Below the pieces are notes generated by a model, which did not search any database, was not told where the DNA came from, and saw only the letters and a program-made list of their open reading frames with translations. Positions 1-8,360 of a stretch of DNA of 8,360 nt are shown piece by piece. The stretch's first letter is position 1. Each line of letters opens with the position of its first letter. Source of the DNA: Vitrella brassicaformis CCMP3155 (lineage: Eukaryota > Protista > Chromerida); NCBI GenBank assembly GCA_001179505.1, contig CDMY01000955.1, positions 1-8,360 of the forward strand, in the 5' to 3' direction. The position numbers and the translations under genes were made by a program.

Positions 1-740
1 GGCCAGACGGCCAAGGGCATCCAGCACGACGTGTGGCGGTCGACCAACGGCATCGACTGGGAGCGGCTGAGCCGCCGCGCGCCGTGGAGGGGCCGACGGC
101 TGTTCCAGACCGCCGTCACGGGCTGGCCAGGCGGGAGTGAGGGCAAGAACATGAGCGTCTATGTGATGGGGGGCGAGGGGCTGAGCGAGGGACACCTCAG
201 CGACCCCTACAACGACGTGTGGAGGTCCGATGACCTCGGTAAGGCACATCCATAGGCGCACATGCGCGCATATGGTCTGCCTGCATCCCTTTCGTGCGCT
301 TCTATCCATCTGTCGCTGTGTGTAGGTGTGACGTGGTCTGAGGTGACGAAGTCGGCTTCCTGGTCTCCCCGTTATGGTTTTGGTGCGTTGGGATTCTTTC
401 ATGGCGGCCTCCTGGTCATAGGCGGGGCCACCATCTCTGACGGAGGCATGGACGAATACGTCAACGACATCTGGTGCGTACAAACGCCACGAAGACACCC
501 AGACCACAACTGCATCTTTTTGCTCGTCTTGTGTGTGTCGGTTCGTTCGTCAGGTATTCTCCTGACGGCGGCAAGACGTGGAAAGAGCTGCTGGCAAACG
601 AGACCAAGCCTTTCTCGCCCCGCGCCTTCTTCGGCCTAACTATCCGGATCAACGAGCTGTGGCTGATCGGCGGCATGCACCTTGCACAGCTCGGTCAGGG
701 ACGCGTCACCATCCCCACCAACGAGGTCTACAGGGCGATA
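1..740 (+). other. Kelch-like / Asp-box (BNR) beta-propeller repeats (at least 3 blades, partial)
   Basis: Repeating unit (A/P)-W/F-x-x-R...hydrophobic-GG...NDVW-x-S-x-D/N-G-x-x-W: HDVWRSTNGIDW, VYVMGG, NDVWRSDDLG|VTW, LLVIGG, NDIW|YSPDGGKTW, LWLIGG. SxDxGxTW is the Asp-box motif and the GG doublet is Kelch-like. Confidence 0.8.
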
Positions 741-3700
741 CTCAAGGCGCGAGAGACCTACCACGACGTCACCGACTGTGAGCAGTCAGCATGGAGCGAG
801 TGGACCCGATGTGACGGGCAGCGGACGCGCATCCGCACTACGATCACGGAGGCGCGAAATGGCGGGGAGCCGTGCGGAGATTCAGTTGAGACAGAGAACT
901 GCACCTTCCACGACGTCACCGACTGTGAGCAGTCAGCATGGAGCGAGTGGACCCGATGTGACGGGCAGCGGACGCGCATCCGCACTACGATCACGGAGGC
1001 GAATGGCGGGGAGCCGTGCGGACATTCGGTCGAGACAGAGAACTGCACCGTCCAACGGGTGGAGACGTGCGAGGGCGACGAATGCGCCGCGCGGACCGTC
1101 TTGTTCTCCCTCAGAGGCTGTCCATGCATCGAGAGGAGCTGCCAGAAGCCCGAGGAGGACGACGTGGATATCCCCGGTGCGCGCTTCTGCAGGGTCCCGA
1201 AGGAGGAGTGCGACAAGGGCCCATGCAAGTGCCTGGGGCCCATCTTTGGCCAGTATTACGATGCGTGCGTCGAGGGGGGCATCGAGCAGGTCTTCACAAA
1301 CGGTGGGTGCCGGTGCACCAAAGAGTGCCGGAGGCGGTCGTCCGACGATAAGCCGACGTGCCCGATCCATCCAAGGGAGGATTGTGCCGACCAGTCGGCA
1401 ACTGGCTCGTATACATTGCCTGAATGCGACAGTCCCAAGTGGGAGTACCAGCTGAGGCCGCCCACTTTCTGCGCGGGGGTGGAGCAGCGCCTCAGCAGCA
1501 GGAGGAAGGCACACTGGACGCATCTCGTGTATATGAACGCGGTGAGTGGGACGGACGCTGCCATGTCACGGAGACGACGCTTTCGTCCGTTTGTGTGTGT
1601 CCGTGTGTGTGCTGGTACATCAGGACAATAATTTGGAGAGCTATGCCATGAGTGACTTAAAGGAGATGCTTCAGATCCCCAAGAGCGACTTCAACCTGCT
1701 GGTGCTTGTCGACCGCGCCGACCCTGAGGTGGAGGATTCGTCTCATAGGGCGATCCACGATATGGTCATCTGTCCAAATGCCACCTCAGACGTCAATGCC
1801 AGAGTGGTATGCATACATGCACGCACGTCCAGTCATCTTCATCCCGACCGATAGAAGAGCATGGATGCCTCATTCGTTCTGTATTTGGATGGCGTCAGTT
1901 GGTTCAGGCAAGGCAGCAGTTTTCCGGGGCTTATGAGCTGCTGATGATTGGCGACCCGTACGAGAACCAGAACAGTACCAGCCGGCGCCGCTGGCTTCTG
2001 AAGAGGGACTTAGAAGAAACTAACATGGACGACGGCCAAGTGCTTCGGGTGGGTCAGACGAGACGGCGTCAAGACATGCCGCTTCCTTCCCAGATGACGA
2101 TTGCCCCTTCCCGTTCGTGTGTGCGATGTATGCAGGAATTCATCGGGGGCGCCTTGAAGGAGTTTCCCGCGGAGCACTACGCCCTCACTTTTTGGGATCA
2201 TGGCGTCGGCCGGAAAGGGTAAACTACCGCGGACAAAACGAAATGCATGTATCAAGAAGCCTGGGTGGACCGTGTGTGTACAGTTTCGGCGGCGATTCTA
2301 GCCACGGCAACTGGGATTCGCTGATGAGCCTCTGGGATCTAGAAACGAACATCAGAGTAAGCAACACAGACCATTCTACGCCATTGATCTTGCTTTCCTC
2401 TAACATCGAGCTTGTCTTGTCTTGTCTTGTCTTGTTTCATTATCCCAGGAAGGCGTTAAGGACGCGGGCATGCCTGATGACTTCCGCTTCGACCTTCTGT
2501 CGTTTGACGCGTGCCTCATGGCGTCGTATGAAGTCACAACGGCCCTCGCATCGCACGGACACTTCTTTCTCGGTCGGTGAATACCACCCATATCATGCAC
2601 AGACAGACAGCTGTTTTCAATACCAATCATGGCCCTCCTTCTCTTCTGCGTGTACGCATGCAGGCAGCGAGACCCTCATCAGCGGCACTGGCTGGGACTG
2701 GAAGTCGCTGAGACCCACACAGCCGAACGGCCAGGCGACGGAGCCATTGGAGTACGCCAGGAAGATCGCGCTGGCGACGATGGACTATTACGTGCGCAAC
2801 GACCGCCTCATGACTCTCGCCATTGTGGACCTCTACAAGATCCTGGAGTTCCGCGAGGCCTTCGCCCAACGCCAGAAGACGCTCACCAGCCGCCTGAACG
2901 ACTGCGTCCAGACAAAGGAGGTCGACCGCATCCGGACGGCCTATCAGAGGGCCGATGACAGTCTGCGAGGTCGCCAAGTCTCGCTATTCAGCCGTGAGAT
3001 AAAGAGTCCGGTGGACATGGGTCAGTTGCTGCAGCATCTGGAGACTGAGATGGAGCGGGTGATGCCAGCCGATGAGCTTGATGCTTTCTCTTTCAAGGTA
3101 CAGGAAGTACAGTCAGTGTACAATGCATTGGCGAATGGAAAATTGTGTTTTCAGGACGCCTACAAAAAGTACAACGAGAGCATCGTCTACTTCAATGGCT
3201 CGGACATTTACGGCAACATCCCCCTGACCGGTAAGGAAGTGTGGACATCGGTGGGCTTATGTAAGTAAGGAACTGCAATGCGTGTGTCAATGTCAGGTCT
3301 GCACGCTGATTTGACTGTGGAAGAGGAGCCGGCCACTTCCCGCTGGCTTGGGGCAGATGCGCATTCCACCGGCGAGTCATCTGCATCTGATGCTCGCCAG
3401 CTGCAGGAAGACGCCAAATGGAGAGCAGGCATCGTAAGGCGGCACGTACACTCACTGGACAGAGAGACCTTTGCTATGTCATGTTCCTTGCTGCCTCGCT
3501 GCGCAGAGCGACGACCCGATCTGGCAGAGCACCGGCACGCCGAACGACCTGCGGGTCTTTCTCGAGCCCATCTACGATACCAAGCGCGCCGTGTGTCGGG
3601 CGAGGAAGGGTCCACCGGAGTCTCAGCCCAAGTTTGTCATGCTCAACTGTGAGCTCTACTTCATGAGCAGTGCCGAGGAGGAGGCCGACAGCACTGCGGC

Positions 3701-4837
3701 AGCGCCGCGCTACCGTGTCGAGGCCTTCAGAAACACCTCTAGCGGAGCCGCCTCATACACGGTCAGTGAGGCAGCGGCGGACATTGCCGTGTAGCTATCG
3801 ATTGACCTGTCCTCCGTATGCTGTTCAGGCCTTGAAGGCCATTATGACCAGGCCCAAACCCGAGAATGATGGCAAGTTCCAGAAGGCCTTTGTGGTGGCG
3901 GAAGATGAGTCGCCCAAGAAGGATGAGCTGGCAGACTATGTGATCGACCGTGTGACGGCCGAGTGGGAGGGCGAGGGCTGGATACTCCATCAGAACCTCT
4001 GGACGGAGATCCAGAAGTTTACGACACGGGGTGACTGCGAGGCTCCCTCATGGATCAGAGAGTGCCCGGCGGGATTTGACGATGCACTGCCCCCACGCCG
4101 GGGGGCGGCCATTAATGAGGGAAGCGGCCGCACGTTCAACCGCCAGTGCGTGTGGCTGAGTGCGCTGGCGCCTCCTCGCAGCAATGGCGCCACCCGGCGA
4201 GTCCTGCAGATCCCTGCCCGCCTCTATCGCAGCTTCACCGACTTCACGCGCGAAGTGAAGGACGCTCGTCCCGCCACGCTGGTGATCGACTACGATGTCA
4301 AGACACCTTACAAAAGCCGCCTGTCTCTCTTTGCTGCAAATCGCTTTGGCGGTGAGGCGGAGGTGTCTTCGCGGGATTGGGGGCTGATCGAGCCGCTGCA
4401 CACGTACGTCAATCTCACGGCTGTGGAGGGTTCGGGTCGATACGACATGGCCGACGACGCGGGCATCCAGGTGGATATGCCGTCGTGCTTCGCATTCATG
4501 TAGGCGGACGGAGAGAGGGAGAGGCAAATGCATGTACACAACGTACATGTGGATACATAGGCATACGAGGGCGAGCCCCTCATTCGTGTGGGTGCTGTGC
4601 TTCAGGTGGGGCTCTGATCCTGAGGTTCCTGAACCTGAGGCGGACGAGATCGAGGTCTTGCAGTGGCCGCCAGCCCTCGGACAGGCAGAAGAGGCCGAAG
4701 GCGGAGCTTCTCAACGGGCTCTGCAAGATACTGACGACGACAAGCGTGGTACGTACTGCTATGGCATGACATATCCGATTATATACTTCACCATCTCTCC
4801 TTCTCTCTCTCTCTGTTTCTCTCTCTATCTCTCTCTC

Positions 4838-4869
<32 letters not shown>

Positions 4870-5522
4870 GTGCGTTGGGCATCAAAGTCAAGGAGATCAT
4901 AGGCGCGACGCCGACAGTGATCGGCAGCTTTATGGTCCTCTCAGACGCCAACACCAACTGTCCGGAGTTCGAGAAGGACCCGCCGGAGTATTGCAAGAAG
5001 TGTGAGGCCCTGGTGCAGGTGGATGAGTGCGACACAGAGAAGGAACTGCTCAATTGCAGTGGTATTTGTGGACGGTTTTGTGAGTCGCGGAATGGCGGGG
5101 CGCCTTGCGGACGCTCACCGGCTGTAGGTGTATTTCAAACTTTCCAGGGCAATGCAATAGAAGAAGAGGATAACGGCCACGACGTCACCGACTGTGAGCA
5201 GTCAGCATGGAGTGAGTGGACCCGATGTGACGGGCAGCGGACGCGCAACCGCACTACGATCACGGAGGCGCGAAATGGCGGGGAGCCGTGCGGAGATTCG
5301 GTTGAGACAGAGAACTGCACCCTCCAACTGGTGGAGCCGGTCTTGTTCTCGCTGACCGGATGCCCCTGCATTGAGAAGAGCTGTCAGAGAGAAGGCCTTA
5401 ATCAGCCAGGCTTCAAGGGCTTCTGTCAAGTTAGGAAAGAGGACTGCGGCGTCGGTTCATGGACGTGTACAAGTATCTCTGGCAGCTACGTCGATGCATG
5501 CGTTGACGGGGACGACGAGTAG
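1..5522 (+). CDS. Large spliced multidomain protein (5'-partial): Kelch/BNR propeller + TSP1 x2 + Cys-rich + clostripain-like C11 peptidase + unknown domain + linker + TSP1 + Cys-rich
   Basis: Manual exon model: <1-238, 326-473, 554-1541, 1624-1806, 1908-2048, 2136-2218, 2284-2356, 2449-2572, 2664-3097, 3155-3230, 3297-3433, 3507-3761, 3829-4499, 4606-4748, 4867-5522. All introns are GT..AG, 57-118 nt. Phases match at every junction and the total is 4350 nt (1450 codons including the stop). Splicing rebuilds recognisable motifs across junctions (NDIW|YSPDGGKTW, LVYMNA|DNNLES, VLR|EFIGG, FFLG|SETL). Exons after 4499 are less certain because the gene could end at TAG 4501-4503. Confidence 0.85.
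762..1049 (+). repeat. Two tandem thrombospondin type-1 (TSP1/TSR, spondin-type) coding repeats, period 147 nt
   Basis: HDVTDCEQSAWSEWTRCDGQRTRIRTTITEA(R)NGGEPCGxSVETENCT at 762-905 and 909-1049. WSxW, RxRxR and GGxxC are TSR hallmarks. The copies differ by 3 substitutions and one 3-nt deletion. Confidence 0.85.
1104..1427 (+). other. Tandem pair of unassigned Cys-rich modules (F-x3-GCxC...C...C...C)
   Basis: FSLRGCPCIERSC...FCRVPKEEC...YYDAC followed by FTNGGCRCTKEC...TCPIHPREDC...PEC. Also present in the duplicate at 5346-5672. Confidence 0.55.
1515..3313 (+). other. Clostripain-family (C11, clan CD) cysteine peptidase domain, unit 1, catalytic dyad intact
   Basis: The spliced sequence gives WTHLVYMNADNNLESYAMSDLKEM (typical C11 N-terminus), NMDDGQVLREFIGGALKEFPAEHYALTFWDHG (His codon 2199-2201), FDLLSFDACLM (Cys codon 2512-2514), FFLGSETLISGTGWDW and a later VDMGQL segment. 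Motifs recognised from knowledge of C11; no search was run. Confidence 0.85.
2411..2435. repeat. (CTTGT)5 microsatellite inside intron 2357-2448
   Basis: cttgtcttgtcttgtcttgtcttgt read directly from the sequence. Confidence 0.9.
3297..4499 (+). other. Unassigned ~350-aa region C-terminal to the C11 core
   Basis: Open across exons 11-13. Blocks shared with unit 2: FLEPIYDxKRxVCRA, WxGEGWIL, PSWIRECPxGF, RTFNRQCVWLSALxPPRxNGATRRVL. Confidence 0.55.
4802..4864. repeat. Compound (CT)n-(GT)13 microsatellite ending at the acceptor of intron 4749-4866
   Basis: Interrupted CT tract 4802-4838, then a GT tract 4839-4864 immediately before AG 4865-4866. Confidence 0.9.
5178..5321 (+). repeat. Third TSP1 repeat (start of the duplicated unit)
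   Basis: HDVTDCEQSAWSEWTRCDGQRTRNRTTITEARNGGEPCGDSVETENCT; 141/144 nt identical to 762-905 by manual comparison. Confidence 0.85.
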
Positions 5523-8267
5523 GTCTTCACCAACAACGGTTGCCGGTGCACCGATGAGTGCCGGAAGCGGTCAAGGAAGCGGTCGTCAGACGATAGGCCG
5601 ACGTGCCTGATCCATTGAATGGAGGATTGTGAAGACCAATCGGAAAGTGGCTCGTACCGATTGCCTGAATGCGACAGTCCCAAGTGGGCGTACCAGCTGA
5701 GGCCGCCCACTTTCTGTGCGGGGGTGGCAGAGCGCCTCGGCCGCAGGAGGAAGGCACACTGGACGCATCTCGTGTATATGAACGCGGTGAGTGGGACGGA
5801 CGCTGCCATGTCACGGAGACGACGCTTTCGTCCGTTTCGTGTGTGTCCGTGTGTGCTGGTATCATCAGGATAATAATTTGGAGAGCTATGCGATGGATGA
5901 CTTGAAAGAGATGCTTCAGATCCCCAAGGGCGACATCAACCTGCTGGTGCTCGTCGACCGCGCCGACCCTAAGGTGGACGACTCGTCGCACCGAGCCATC
6001 CACGAGATGGTCGTCTGCCCAGAAGTCACCCCAGAGGTCAACGCCAGAGAGGTATGCAGGCACAGGCACTCTCACAAACATACATACAGACAGACAGACG
6101 AGCGTTTATGGCTTTGCAGTAATGTGCGGTTCAGGTCAGACAGCAATTTTCTGAGACCTATGAGCTGCTGATGATCGGCGATCCGTATGAGAACGAGAAC
6201 AGCACCAGCAGGCGCCGCTGGCTGCTCAAGAGAGACTGGGGGGAGGCCAATATGGACGATGGGGAAGTGCTTCGAGTGAGTGGTGTGATAGCCATTGTCT
6301 CTATCGAGTGACAATGGCGGTCTTCTGTGGGTGTGCTTTTGTGTGGTTCTGGTGTTGTGTGCGAGTAGGAGTTTATCTCCAATGCGCTGAAGGATTTTCC
6401 CGCTGAGCATTACGCACTCACTTTTTAGGATCATGGCGTCGGCCGGAAAGGGTAACTGAAGCTAAACATGGAAGCATGCATCAACAGACCCTAGAATGGC
6501 AAATTTGTGTGGGGGTGTTGTTTGCAGGTTTGGTGGCGACTCCCACACGCCTGAACTTGCAGCACTGCTAAACCTCTTCGCTCTGGAGCAGGGCATTAGG
6601 GCAAGCAGAGCCTTGCTGAACCCGAGAATTGTTTCAGTGTCCTCTTTTGTTGACCACAGAATGGAGTCAAGGGTGCAGGCATGCCTGACGACTTCCGCTT
6701 CGACCTGCTATCATTCGACGCATGCCTGATGAGCTCATATGAGGTCACGTCTGCGCTGTCGGCGCAGGGACACTACTTTCTCGGTAGTGAACGTAATTAC
6801 TCAGTACAAGCGCCCTCTGCTGGCTTGCCTGACATGCTCTCTTACCGCGTCTTGCAGGAAGTGAGACCATTATTAGTGGCGATGGCTGGCGTTGGCAGTC
6901 CTTAAAACCCAACACAACTGGCAGCGATGGCAATGCAACCCCGCCGCTCGACTACGCCAGAGGCATCGCCCTAGCGACGATGGACTCCTACGTGCGGCAG
7001 CATCGATTGATGAATCTCGCCATTGTCGACCTGTACAAGCAGCACGAGTTCCGCTAGGCCTTCGCCAAGAGCCAGCAGAGGCTTGTAAGTCGGCTGGACA
7101 CGTGTATGAAGACAGTCGAGGTCGATCGCGTCCGGACGGCTCATCAGAACGCCGACGACGGACTGCGAGGGTACAAGCAAGAGCTATTCAGCCGTGACAT
7201 CGCTAATCCGGTGGACATGGGCCATCTACTGCGTTCTCTGGAGTCAGAGATGGAGCGCGTGATGCCGTCAGAGGAGCTGGAGATCCTCAGAGAGGCTTAT
7301 CGACTGTACAACCAAAGCATCCTCTACTCCAATGCATCTAGTGGATTTGAGGCCATTCCGTTGACAGGTCCGCATAATTCATCACGACACACAGAAGACA
7401 CACAGTAACGAAACATGAGTATTTGTCCGTATGTCGTTTCATCAGGAGTGCATGTCGATCTGCCTCGGAAGCCAGGGCATCATCGGTGGCTCACAGCGAT
7501 GGGTTCGCCCGCGCTGCCTGCAAGTTGTGAGCTGCAGGTCAATAACGCCACGATATGGGGAGCGACGATCCAACAAGATGAGTACTGGCAGGAGTTCGGC
7601 ACGCCGAGGGACTTGATGGTTTTCCTCGAACCCATCTACGACATCAAGCGCACTGTGTGTCGTGCGGGGCAGAGTCAAGAAGACAGCGATGTGCCCTTTC
7701 GATTTATCAACTCTACTCTTTACCTGATGACCAACGCCACTGTGAAGGAAGACTCGACCACCGCAGAGGCGTTGACGTCTTCAGAAGACAAGCCCTCGCT
7801 ACTCTACAAAATCGAAGTTAGAAACACATCTGACGGAGTTGCTTCCTACACGGTGGGGCGAAGAGCAAGAGAGCGAATCATAATGACTGCATGAGTGCAT
7901 CCTTCATTGCGTTCAGGCCCTGAAGGCCATGGTGACTAAACCCGAATCCGACAGTACCACGTCCCGCCGGGCCTTTGTGGTGACTACAGAAGAGCCACCA
8001 GATAAGGAAGAACGGCGAGAAGCGGGCATCCGATCGATCACGTGACGGCCGACTGGCAGGGCGAGGGCTGGATCCTCTATCAACGCATCTGGGGAGGTAT
8101 CGATGGCAATTTGACACGGTCCAAATGCAACGTCCCCTCGTGGATCAGAGAATGCCCTGAGGGTTTCAGCAATGCCGACAGGAGCAACCGGACATTCAAC
8201 CGCCAGTGTGTATGGCTGAGTGCGCTGGTGCCTCCTCGCAGGAATGGAGCTACCCGGCGAGTCCTGC
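5523..8267 (+). pseudogene. Decayed, telomere-truncated second copy of the Cys-rich + C11 peptidase + unknown-domain unit
   Basis: Exons 4867-5786, 5869-6051, 6135-6275, 6369-6451, 6528-6600, 6660-6783, 6858-7367, 7446-7852, 7917-8267. Internal exon lengths 183/141/83/73/124 equal those of unit 1. In-frame stops at 5520 (TAG vs CAG), 5616 (TGA vs CCA), 6426 (TAG vs TGG) and 7055 (TAG vs GAG). Frameshift at ~8010-8035. GC donor at 6601. His 6432-6434 and Cys 6723-6725 are retained. Confidence 0.82.
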
Positions 8268-8360
8268 CTTAGGGTTTAGGGTTTAGGGTCTAGGGGTTAG
8301 GGTTTAGGGGGTAGGGTTTAGGGTTTAGGGTTTAGGGGTTTAGGGGTTTAGGGGTTTACG
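8268..8360 (+). repeat. Telomeric repeat tract, TTTAGGG type with variants (TTAGGG, TCTAGGGG, TTTAGGGG)
   Basis: About 12 units. The G-rich strand runs 5'->3' toward the window end, the orientation expected at a right chromosome end. Confidence 0.9.

What the first reader, a model, noticed from the sequence alone, without database searches (positions are those of the whole stretch)
1..4499. Unusual architecture: bacterial-type clostripain (C11) protease fused to TSP1 adhesion repeats and a Kelch/Asp-box propeller in an intron-rich eukaryotic gene
C11 peptidases are best known from bacteria (clostripain, PmC11, fragipain), with few characterised eukaryotic members (trypanosomatid PNT1). TSP1 repeats are typical of apicomplexan and animal surface or invasion proteins. 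A single spliced ORF joins both with a propeller and disulfide-rich modules, and the His/Cys dyad is intact. This suggests a secreted or surface adhesin-protease, possibly from an old horizontally acquired C11 that has since gained many introns. I do not recognise this domain combination, but cannot search for it.
Basis: partly seen in the sequence, partly recalled or inferred. Interest (0 to 1): 0.75.

Follow-up and report, generated by a model that had tools for sequence, protein, structure and literature searches.

The report
Secreted clostripain protease with adhesion modules
This is a real gene of the alga Vitrella brassicaformis that joins a clostripain-type cysteine protease to a Kelch propeller and thrombospondin repeats. 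It is an unstudied variant of a protease-plus-adhesion-module design already annotated in related parasites, and the gene itself is already in the public annotation.

Summary
The window is a whole 8,360-bp scaffold of Vitrella brassicaformis CCMP3155. A public gene model (P0004, 1452 aa) maps exactly onto it as 15 GT-AG exons. One uninterrupted exon (554-1541) encodes the last Kelch blade, two TSP1 repeats, a Cys-rich spacer and the first strand of the C11 domain, so the fusion is real. The C11 match is strong (109 bits against a cut-off of 25.8). His591, Cys643 and the S1 Asp641 are intact.

Three corrections apply:
- The gene does not end at 4499. The apparent stop lies inside a conserved donor site, and the ORF continues through an acidic linker into a second protease unit.
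- That second unit (about 5172-8360) carries four in-frame stops and is decaying.
- C11 genes in chromerids, and the horizontal-transfer idea, were published in 2016. C11 fused to extracellular modules is annotated in Cryptosporidium and Toxoplasma, and an environmental protein has TSP1 directly before C11.

What is new is a Vitrella-only subfamily of at least 9 units. It has its own C-terminal region, interchangeable N-terminal modules and tandem units. This scan had already noted sister loci of this family on other DNA of the same genome. I rate it a new variant of a known kind, of moderate interest.

The parts
1..752 (+). Kelch-type propeller: end of blade 3 and blades 4-6 (exon 1 = 1-238, exon 2 = 326-473, start of exon 3 from 554). 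Introns at 239-325 and 474-553. The contig starts inside the gene, so about 240 N-terminal residues are missing.
   Evidence: P0004 mapping. Kelch_KLHDC2 E 8e-7 and 29 bits, below the cut-off. Three hydrophobic-GG motifs and three Asp-box-like N-D-V/I-W-x-S-x-D/N-x(2-3)-W motifs; the closest paralogue P0005 has six GG blades.
753..1052 (+). Two tandem TSP1 repeats with a WSEW motif, inside exon 3.
   Evidence: TSP_1 45.7 bits (cut-off 21.6) and TSP1_spondin 48 bits (cut-off 41). Direct repeat D1 at 761-910 and 908-1057.
1053..1526 (+). Cys-rich spacer with no Pfam family, found just before the C11 domain in every paralogue. Still inside exon 3.
   Evidence: tblastn of this piece finds it upstream of C11 at C243, C223, C708, C405, C209 (twice) and unit B. 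Pfam gave no hit.
1527..3190 (+). Peptidase C11 (clostripain) domain, spread over the end of exon 3 and exons 4-10. Catalytic His591 codon at 2199-2201, S1 Asp641 at 2506-2508, catalytic Cys643 at 2512-2514.
   Evidence: PF03415 109.4 bits over residues 454-819. Alignment to solved C11 structures 6n9j, 6mzo, 9cip and 3uws across the His and Cys motifs. The E3/E4 junction LVYMNA|DNNLE lies inside the domain.
3297..4499 (+). Family-specific C-terminal region (exons 11-13: 3297-3433, 3507-3761, 3829-4499) of unknown fold.
   Evidence: Conserved at 45-82% in all paralogues. No Pfam hit. The AlphaFold model of exon 13 was unusable, pLDDT 42. The Atlas gave no hit above 0.77.
4500..4605 (+). Intron 13. 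Its donor GTAGGC in phase 2 creates the apparent stop TAG at 4501-4503.
   Evidence: All eight paralogues have GT plus a donor consensus here (GTAGG, GTAAG, GTGAG, GTACG). C708 has no stop at this position. Frames fit across the junction. Gene models P0002, P0004, P0005 and P0006 all splice here.
4606..4748 (+). Exon 14, an acidic linker ending in ...DTDDDKR.
   Evidence: Conserved downstream of exon 13 in all paralogous loci. Part of P0004.
4867..5519 (+). Exon 15: Cys-rich tail (4867-5171), third TSP1 repeat (about 5178-5324) and the start of unit B's Cys-rich spacer. It is closed by TAG at 5520-5522, where unit A has CAG.
   Evidence: P0004 mapping. TSP1_spondin hit at residues 1344-1387. 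CAG-to-TAG comparison.
5523..8360 (+). Rest of tandem unit B, a decaying second C11 unit that runs off the contig. Further in-frame stops at 5616-5618 (TGA), 6426-6428 (TAG, replacing the Trp just before the catalytic His motif) and 7055-7057 (TAG). The Cys motif FDACLM is kept at 6660-6782. The public fragment model P0003 covers 7106-7367, 7446-7852 and 7917-8042.
   Evidence: Direct repeats at a spacing of about 4.2 kb. tblastn exon matches of 47-98%. Stops. Splice sites mostly kept. dN/dS 0.17-0.28. P0003 mapping.

Best explanation
The window is a 5'-truncated fragment of one nuclear gene of Vitrella brassicaformis. The gene encodes a secreted, multi-domain cysteine protease of the clostripain (C11, clan CD) family.

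Shown:
- The domain order in one ORF is Kelch-type propeller, two TSP1 repeats, Cys-rich spacer, C11 domain, family-specific C-terminal region, acidic linker, Cys-rich tail.
- The catalytic His, the catalytic Cys and the S1 Asp are intact.
- The gene belongs to a Vitrella-specific subfamily of at least 9 units whose N-terminal modules differ between copies.
- The C11 core groups with the extracellular C11 proteins of apicomplexans.
- Behind the tail the ORF runs in frame into a second unit (TSP1, spacer, C11, C-terminal region). That unit now carries four nonsense codons and is a recently inactivated tandem duplicate.

Inferred:
- The protein enters the secretory pathway, as its full-length paralogues have N-terminal signal sequences.
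- The propeller and TSP1 repeats tether it to glycan or matrix ligands on the cell surface or wall.
- The C11 domain is made as a zymogen and activates itself by cutting the loop between His and Cys, as PmC11 and clostripain do.
- It then cleaves after Arg or Lys.
For: Genome identity: 72,700,666 bp in 1064 scaffolds, the same figures as in Woo et al. 2015.

Fusion:
- Exon 3 (554-1541) is a single open frame running from Kelch blade 6 through both TSP1 repeats and the spacer into THLVYMNA. That stretch aligns with strand 1 of the solved C11 structure 6n9j and lies within the Pfam C11 match.
- P0004 maps exactly onto the window with 14 GT-AG introns.

C11 membership:
- 109 bits.
- FWDHG and FDACLM align to FWSHG and FDACYM of 6n9j.
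- The roles of His133, Cys179, Asp177 and Lys147 come from the PmC11 paper.

Selection: dN/dS is 0.30 against C243 at dS 0.21, and 0.2-0.3 against the other copies.

Secretion: the N-termini of P0005 and P0002 are hydrophobic and there is no other TM segment.

Family:
- define the paralogues.
- A profile of exon 9 finds only three representatives in 1.84 billion proteins, each matching a Vitrella locus of this family.
- The clade with apicomplexans has support 100/99.
- A segment missing from most bacterial-type hits is shared with Cryptosporidium.

Continuation past 4499.

Decay of unit B.
Against: - No transcript data could be examined here. Splicing rests on the public gene models, on conserved splice sites and on frame consistency.
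- The 5' end, including the signal peptide, is off the contig and is inferred from a paralogue that is 92-100% identical in the shared exons.
- Kelch and BNR matches are below Pfam's curated cut-offs.
- No activity, localisation or ligand data exist for any member.
- No basic residue sits exactly at the position of the PmC11 cleavage site (His+14). Candidates are R595/K596 and R626/K630.
- The locus sits on a small orphan scaffold next to a decaying copy, so the whole locus could be on its way to loss.
Confidence: 0.75

Rival explanations
1. The gene encodes a two-unit polyprotease. Both C11 units are (or recently were) translated as one chain and cut apart at the acidic linker, which ends in a basic residue, by the protease itself. 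The four stops in unit B would then be strain-specific or assembly errors.
For: The tail of unit A runs into unit B's TSP1 inside one exon without a break. Two units joined by the same linker also lie in tandem on C209. Unit B has dN/dS of 0.17-0.28, like the live copies, and keeps most splice sites and exon lengths. The linker ends in KR|E, HR|E or NH|E in the four models.
Against: There are four independent nonsense codons, one of them replacing the Trp of the FWDHG motif. One donor has changed to GC. Substitution errors at that density are unlikely in an Illumina assembly. Single-unit paralogue models (P0002, P0006) end soon after the tail.
Confidence: 0.12
2. The whole locus, unit A included, is a non-functional duplicate of the C243 gene, stranded on an orphan scaffold.
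For: The contig is only 8.4 kb and starts inside the gene. The neighbouring unit B is dead. The closest paralogue, C243, has the same architecture.
Against: Unit A has no stop or frameshift in 15 exons, and all 14 introns keep GT-AG. The catalytic residues are intact. dN/dS against C243 is 0.30 at dS 0.21, so the copies are not alleles and have been under constraint.
Confidence: 0.1
3. The propeller/TSP1 part and the C11 part are separate genes merged by gene prediction.
For: Vitrella models can be over-merged. P0005 carries what looks like a complete GST at its C-terminus.
Against: A single stop-free exon (554-1541) spans Kelch blade 6, both TSP1 repeats, the spacer and the first C11 strand. 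There is no start codon context or intergenic gap. The same holds at C243.
Confidence: 0.03

Closest known systems
[quoted passage not shown]
   Same: The C11 core falls in one clade with support 100/99. The motifs WTHL(V/I)Y..ADNNLE, LW(D/N)HG...GFG(G/D)D, FDACLM and GxGW are shared, as is a segment missing from most bacterial-type hits. Both are large secretory proteins that join C11 to cysteine-rich adhesion modules.
   Different: The apicomplexan proteins have C11 near the N-terminus followed by LNR/EGF and a C-terminal TM helix. The window protein has a propeller and TSP1 before C11, no EGF/LNR, no TM, and its own C-terminal region. The post-catalytic region is not detectably homologous. 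Vitrella has a separate, closer counterpart of cgd6_670 on contig C596. None has been functionally characterised; cgd6_670 was only localised as non-micronemal and assigned to the oocyst wall.
PmC11 (Parabacteroides merdae, PDB 3UWS/4YEC), clostripain (9CIP) and the C11 structures 6N9J and 6MZO
   Same: The His/Cys dyad, the Asp two residues before the Cys (S1, Arg/Lys specificity) and the N-terminal strand motif are shared.
   Different: The bacterial enzymes are single-domain proteins of about 370-530 aa. Identity is low (E 5e-11 over about 120 residues). The window protein has an extra segment between strands and a different C-terminal region. The autoprocessing site is not conserved in position.
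Environmental protein P0025 (ENA metagenome, 1760 aa)
   Same: A TSP1 repeat lies directly N-terminal to a C11 domain of the same clade, and the design is extracellular.
   Different: It has EGF-like, Kre9/KNH, fn3 and a C-terminal TM helix, with no propeller. Identity is 31%.
PNT1 of Trypanosoma brucei
   Same: It is a eukaryotic C11 peptidase.
   Different: It belongs to a divergent kinetoplastid clade and is an intracellular, kinetoplast-associated single-domain protein.

Membership tests
Peptidase C11 (clostripain family, clan CD; PF03415) | Match to the family HMM above the curated cut-off | tested here: met
   109.4 bits against 25.8 on P0004, which is the exact spliced product of the window. 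The exon-wise fragments are colinear and sum to about 75 bits.
Peptidase C11 (clostripain family, clan CD; PF03415) | Catalytic His and Cys at the family positions | tested here: met
   His591 in FWDHG aligns with FWSHG, and Cys643 in FDACLM aligns with FDACYM, of the solved C11 protein 6n9j. The dyad is defined in PMC4850288.
Peptidase C11 (clostripain family, clan CD; PF03415) | Acidic S1 residue (Asp177 of PmC11) two residues before the Cys | tested here: met
   Asp641 in FDAC.
Peptidase C11 (clostripain family, clan CD; PF03415) | Autoprocessing after a basic residue in the loop between His and Cys | tested here: inconclusive
   The loop 592-640 holds R595, K596, R626 and K630, but none is at the PmC11 position His+14. 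There is no biochemical test.
Peptidase C11 (clostripain family, clan CD; PF03415) | Caspase-like alpha/beta/alpha fold and activity on Arg/Lys substrates | not testable with these tools
   P0004 exceeds the 1200-aa limit of the fold tool and the domain is split over 8 exons. Activity needs an enzyme assay.
Thrombospondin type 1 repeat (PF00090 / PF19028) | HMM match above the cut-off, with the WxxW motif and conserved cysteines | tested here: met
   TSP_1 45.7 bits (cut-off 21.6) and TSP1_spondin 48 bits (cut-off 41). WSEW occurs at residues 209, 258 and 1349.
Kelch beta-propeller | HMM match above the curated cut-off | tested here: inconclusive
   Kelch_KLHDC2 gives 29 bits (E 8e-7) in P0004 and 44.8 bits (E 1e-11) in P0005. 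Both are below the cut-off of 50.
Kelch beta-propeller | Six repeats of about 50-60 residues with a hydrophobic-GG motif and a conserved Trp | tested here: met
   The full-length paralogue P0005 has six GG motifs, at 114, 174, 237, 296, 349 and 407. The window keeps three and a half blades because the contig is cut.
BNR/Asp-box repeat (PF02012) | S-x-D-x-G-x-T-W motif and an HMM match above the cut-off | tested here: inconclusive
   Three Asp-box-like motifs are present, the best being YSPDGGKTW. BNR scores 16.3 bits against a cut-off of 27. The motif sits inside Kelch-type blades.
Apicomplexan C11-EGF/LNR membrane proteins (cgd6_670 / CBDP3 type) | C11 core in the same clade | tested here: met
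   Clade of Vitrella, Cryptosporidium, Cystoisospora, P0025 and P0028 with support 100/99.
Apicomplexan C11-EGF/LNR membrane proteins (cgd6_670 / CBDP3 type) | EGF/LNR modules after the protease and a C-terminal TM anchor | tested here: not met
   P0004 has no EGF or LNR Pfam hit and no TM segment. The paralogue P0002 has one LNR, but at its N-terminus.
Apicomplexan C11-EGF/LNR membrane proteins (cgd6_670 / CBDP3 type) | Homology of the region after the catalytic Cys | tested here: not met
   The exon 9 profile finds only the three representatives that match this Vitrella family. The C596 locus aligns to Cryptosporidium across this region (157 bits) but to P0004 only around the dyad (57 bits).

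The most novel reading that the evidence does not exclude
Vitrella has evolved tandem 'polyprotease' genes. Several complete adhesin-plus-C11 units are strung in one ORF and separated by an acidic linker that ends in a basic residue. The Arg/Lys-specific protease would cut that linker itself and release the units. The array would grow and shrink by unequal crossing-over, and the window would show one such array with its second unit freshly dead.
Probability: 0.12. Interest if true: 0.6.

Novelty: new variant of a known kind. Interest (0 to 1): 0.35.

Why it matters
Extracellular C11 proteases are present in chromerids, Cryptosporidium and coccidians but have never been studied functionally. 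Vitrella is the free-living relative in which the toolkit of apicomplexan surface proteins (TSP1, EGF, LNR) can be examined without a host.

A lineage-specific expansion that swaps adhesion modules in front of one conserved protease cassette suggests targeted extracellular proteolysis, for example remodelling of the cell wall, cyst or sporangium. It also offers a tractable model for the orphan apicomplexan enzymes.

It does not overturn anything. The family, its presence in chromerids and its probable bacterial origin are already in the literature.

Tried and rejected
- AlphaFold2 on exon 13 (223 aa) with a 7-row paralogue alignment gave pLDDT 42, which is unusable, so I ran no fold search.
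- An ESM Atlas look-up of P0004 residues 860-1195 gave nothing above 0.77 and the Atlas holds no model.
- The PDB sequence search with P0005 was swamped by its GST tail and gave no Kelch structure.
The source organism and gene context of P0025 and P0028 could not be examined, and no transcript-derived contigs were reached.
- I first read the linker exon as a possible first exon with a signal peptide (MYTTYMWIHRHTRASPSFVWVLCF...). I rejected this because only the acceptor AG, not the ATG or the hydrophobic stretch, is conserved in the diverged paralogues.
- I considered that the TAG at 5520 might be skipped by a new intron (GA|GTAGGT). I rejected this because the sequence after it is still homologous coding sequence.
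Exons were searched one by one by reference. The joined step was left out, and for whole-protein scans I used the database protein P0004, which the search tool returned and which maps exactly to the window.
Full report
**What the window is.** The window is the whole of contig C955 of an assembly of 72,700,666 bp in 1064 contigs. Woo et al. 2015 (PMC4501334) give exactly these figures for Vitrella brassicaformis CCMP3155, a free-living photosynthetic relative of the Apicomplexa. The DNA is 53-64% G+C and holds two tandem paralogous units about 4.2 kb apart.

**Checking the observation.**
- I searched the open frames one at a time by reference.
  - Window:441-1628 carries two TSP1 repeats above Pfam's cut-offs.
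  - Four separate frames carry colinear pieces of Peptidase_C11: profile positions 3-40, 71-99, 133-158 and 164-263.
- The protein search returned P0004 instead: a 1452-aa NCBI protein from a contig of 8360 bp.
- A script mapped P0004 letter for letter onto the window as 15 exons: 1-238, 326-473, 554-1541, 1624-1806, 1899-2048, 2136-2218, 2284-2356, 2449-2572, 2664-3097, 3155-3230, 3297-3433, 3507-3761, 3829-4499, 4606-4748 and 4867-5519.
- The 14 introns are all GT-AG and measure 57-118 nt.
- On P0004, Pfam gives:
  - Peptidase_C11 109.4 bits (cut-off 25.8)
  - TSP_1 45.7 bits (cut-off 21.6)
  - TSP1_spondin 48 bits (cut-off 41)
  - a Kelch family at E 8e-7, below its cut-off
  - weak Sortilin/BNR hits

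**The fusion is real.** The strongest evidence does not depend on splicing. Exon 3 (554-1541) is one stop-free frame. It runs from the sixth Kelch blade (YSPDGGKTW...LIGG) through both TSP1 repeats and a Cys-rich spacer into ...HWTHLVYMNA. That last stretch aligns with the first strand of the solved C11 protein 6n9j and lies inside the Pfam C11 match. The next exon continues with DNNLESY, which completes the family's N-terminal motif. The closest paralogue, on contig C243, has the same layout.

**The catalytic machinery is intact.** FWDHG (His591, codon 2199-2201) and FDACLM (Asp641, Cys643, codons 2506-2508 and 2512-2514) align with FWSHG and FDACYM of 6n9j. They also match 6mzo, clostripain 9cip and PmC11 3uws/4yec. 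In PmC11 these positions are the dyad His133/Cys179 and the S1 residue Asp177. That enzyme prefers Arg/Lys at P1 and is activated by self-cleavage at Lys147 in the loop between His and Cys (PMC4850288). The corresponding loop here holds R595, K596, R626 and K630, but none at the same offset, so autoprocessing is inferred and not shown.

**The gene does not end at 4499.**
- The apparent stop at 4501-4503 is part of a phase-2 donor, AT|GTAGGC.
- The same position in all eight paralogous copies has GT followed by AGG, AAG, GAG or ACG. The 'stop' therefore varies (TAG, TAA, TGA) and is absent on C708 (TAC).
- A conserved acceptor follows, then an acidic 'linker' exon (4606-4748) and a Cys-rich tail exon starting at 4867. 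Both are in frame and both are conserved downstream of every paralogue.
- The public models P0002, P0004, P0005 and P0006 all use these junctions.

**The second unit.**
- In the window, the tail exon continues without a break into a third TSP1 repeat and a second spacer-C11-C-terminal unit.
- That unit carries four in-frame stops:
  - TAG 5520, where unit A has CAG
  - TGA 5616, where unit A has CCA
  - TAG 6426, replacing the Trp of FWDHG
  - TAG 7055, where unit A has GAG
- Its exon lengths and most splice sites are kept, with one donor now GC.
- Its dN/dS against the other copies (0.17-0.28) is no higher than among the live copies (0.14-0.42).
- I read it as a recently inactivated tandem duplicate.
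- The public annotation ends P0004 at the first TAG and calls a 265-aa fragment, P0003, further on.

**The family in this genome.**
- Exons 9 and 13 find at least nine units: two here, two in tandem on C209, and one each on C243, C708, C223, C405 and C541.
- Unit A and C243 differ by dS 0.21, so they are paralogues and not alleles.
- The cassette of spacer, C11, C-terminal region, linker and tail is constant. The N-terminal modules differ:
  - signal peptide plus six-bladed propeller plus one TSP1 in P0005 (C243)
  - signal anchor plus LNR plus EGF-like plus a proline-rich repeat in P0002 (C708)
- Neither full-length model has a second hydrophobic segment, so these proteins look secreted or N-terminally anchored.
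- A profile of exon 9 searched against 1.84 billion representative proteins found only three, and their sequences match loci C541, C708 and unit B of this genome. The post-catalytic part is therefore lineage-specific.

**Relatives elsewhere.**
- Searching with the C11 core retrieved 57 proteins of 799-2541 aa.
- After the Vitrella copies, the best hits are Cryptosporidium proteins. [quoted passage not shown]
  - They include the orthologues of cgd6_670, which is described as having a signal peptide, a C11 domain, a notch domain, 2 EGF domains and a TM helix.
  - Its Toxoplasma counterpart is CBDP3.
  - A Cystoisospora protein is also among the hits.
- In a maximum-likelihood tree of the C11 domains, Vitrella, the apicomplexans and three unnamed proteins (P0017, P0025, P0028) form a clade with support 100/99. 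Vitrella sits on a long branch.
- The Cryptosporidium members match the query continuously across a segment that is missing from most bacterial-type hits.
- P0025, an environmental protein of that clade, reads EGF-like, TSP1, C11, Kre9/KNH, fn3, TM. TSP1 next to C11 is therefore not unique to Vitrella.
- A different Vitrella locus (C596) is the closer counterpart of cgd6_670: 157 bits to Cryptosporidium against 57 bits to P0004.
- Only P0004 and P0005 combined Kelch, TSP1 and C11.

**What was already known.** Grewal et al. 2016 (PMC4850289) listed C11 proteins from Vitrella, Chromera, Cryptosporidium, Toxoplasma, Neospora and Eimeria. They proposed lateral transfer from a prokaryote into a plastid-bearing ancestor. 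The chromerid genome paper mentions expansions of TSP1, EGF and vWA proteins but not clostripain, peptidase or Kelch. I found no paper describing a C11-TSP1 or C11-Kelch protein and no functional study of the apicomplexan members beyond localisation. Earlier notes of this scan flagged sister loci in the same genome. One follow-up classed the C11-LNR-EGF gene as a new member of a known family.

**Mechanism proposed.**
- Shown: the architecture, the intact catalytic and S1 residues, purifying selection, and signal sequences in the paralogues.
- Inferred:
  - secretion
  - tethering through the propeller and TSP1 repeats
  - zymogen activation by self-cleavage
  - Arg/Lys-specific cleavage of extracellular substrates
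- Speculative: the linker's basic end (KR|E, HR|E) may be a processing site that releases the tail or, in two-unit genes, separates the units.

**Limits.**
- The C-terminal region could not be modelled: pLDDT 42, and nothing from the Atlas.
- The C11 domain could not be folded, because the protein exceeds the size limit and the domain is split over eight exons.

**Verdict.** The gene boundary is wrong. The family, its chromerid members, the transfer hypothesis and the 'C11 plus adhesion modules' design are already on record, and this protein is already in public databases. What remains new is a Vitrella-specific subfamily with module swapping and tandem units. I rate it a new variant of a known kind, of moderate interest.

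Noticed in passing
L029/L030 (G000:C243:186500-200500); protein P0005 residues 1545-1755: The public model of the closest paralogue ends in what looks like a complete YfcG/YghU-type glutathione S-transferase. An internal MSIDLY... start follows the Cys-rich tail. It looks like two neighbouring genes merged by the annotation.
   Followed up: partly
L039 (G000:C209:135400-145399), minus strand, 327-7257: Two C11 units lie head to tail, joined by the same linker exon. This is the 'tandem polyprotein' noted by another reader. The downstream unit has an in-frame stop replacing a conserved Trp in its last large exon (RRCL*SSAI).
   Followed up: partly
L035 (G000:C405:337500-347499); protein P0006: The public model of this paralogue skips the exon with the catalytic Cys (…AGMPD|GSETL…). 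The genomic exon is only 51% identical to the window's. This may be a pseudo-protease copy.
   Followed up: no
window 3098-3154: A 57-nt intron is in frame and stop-free in unit A. It carries a TAG in C243 and C223 and is absent from unit B, C405, C541 and both C209 units. Intron presence therefore varies among the paralogues.
   Followed up: partly
window 4790-4866: Intron 14 holds a CT-rich run followed by a (GT)n microsatellite that ends directly at the acceptor AG.
   Followed up: no
L001 (G000:C596:12187-15399): A separate Vitrella C11 gene is much closer to Cryptosporidium cgd6_670. It has no intron between the His and Cys motifs, whereas the window's family has two there.
   Followed up: partly
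protein P0025 (ENA metagenome): An unnamed 1760-aa type I membrane protein reads EGF-like, TSP1, C11, Kre9/KNH, fn3, TM and lies in the same clade as the alveolate C11s. Its source organism is unknown.
   Followed up: partly
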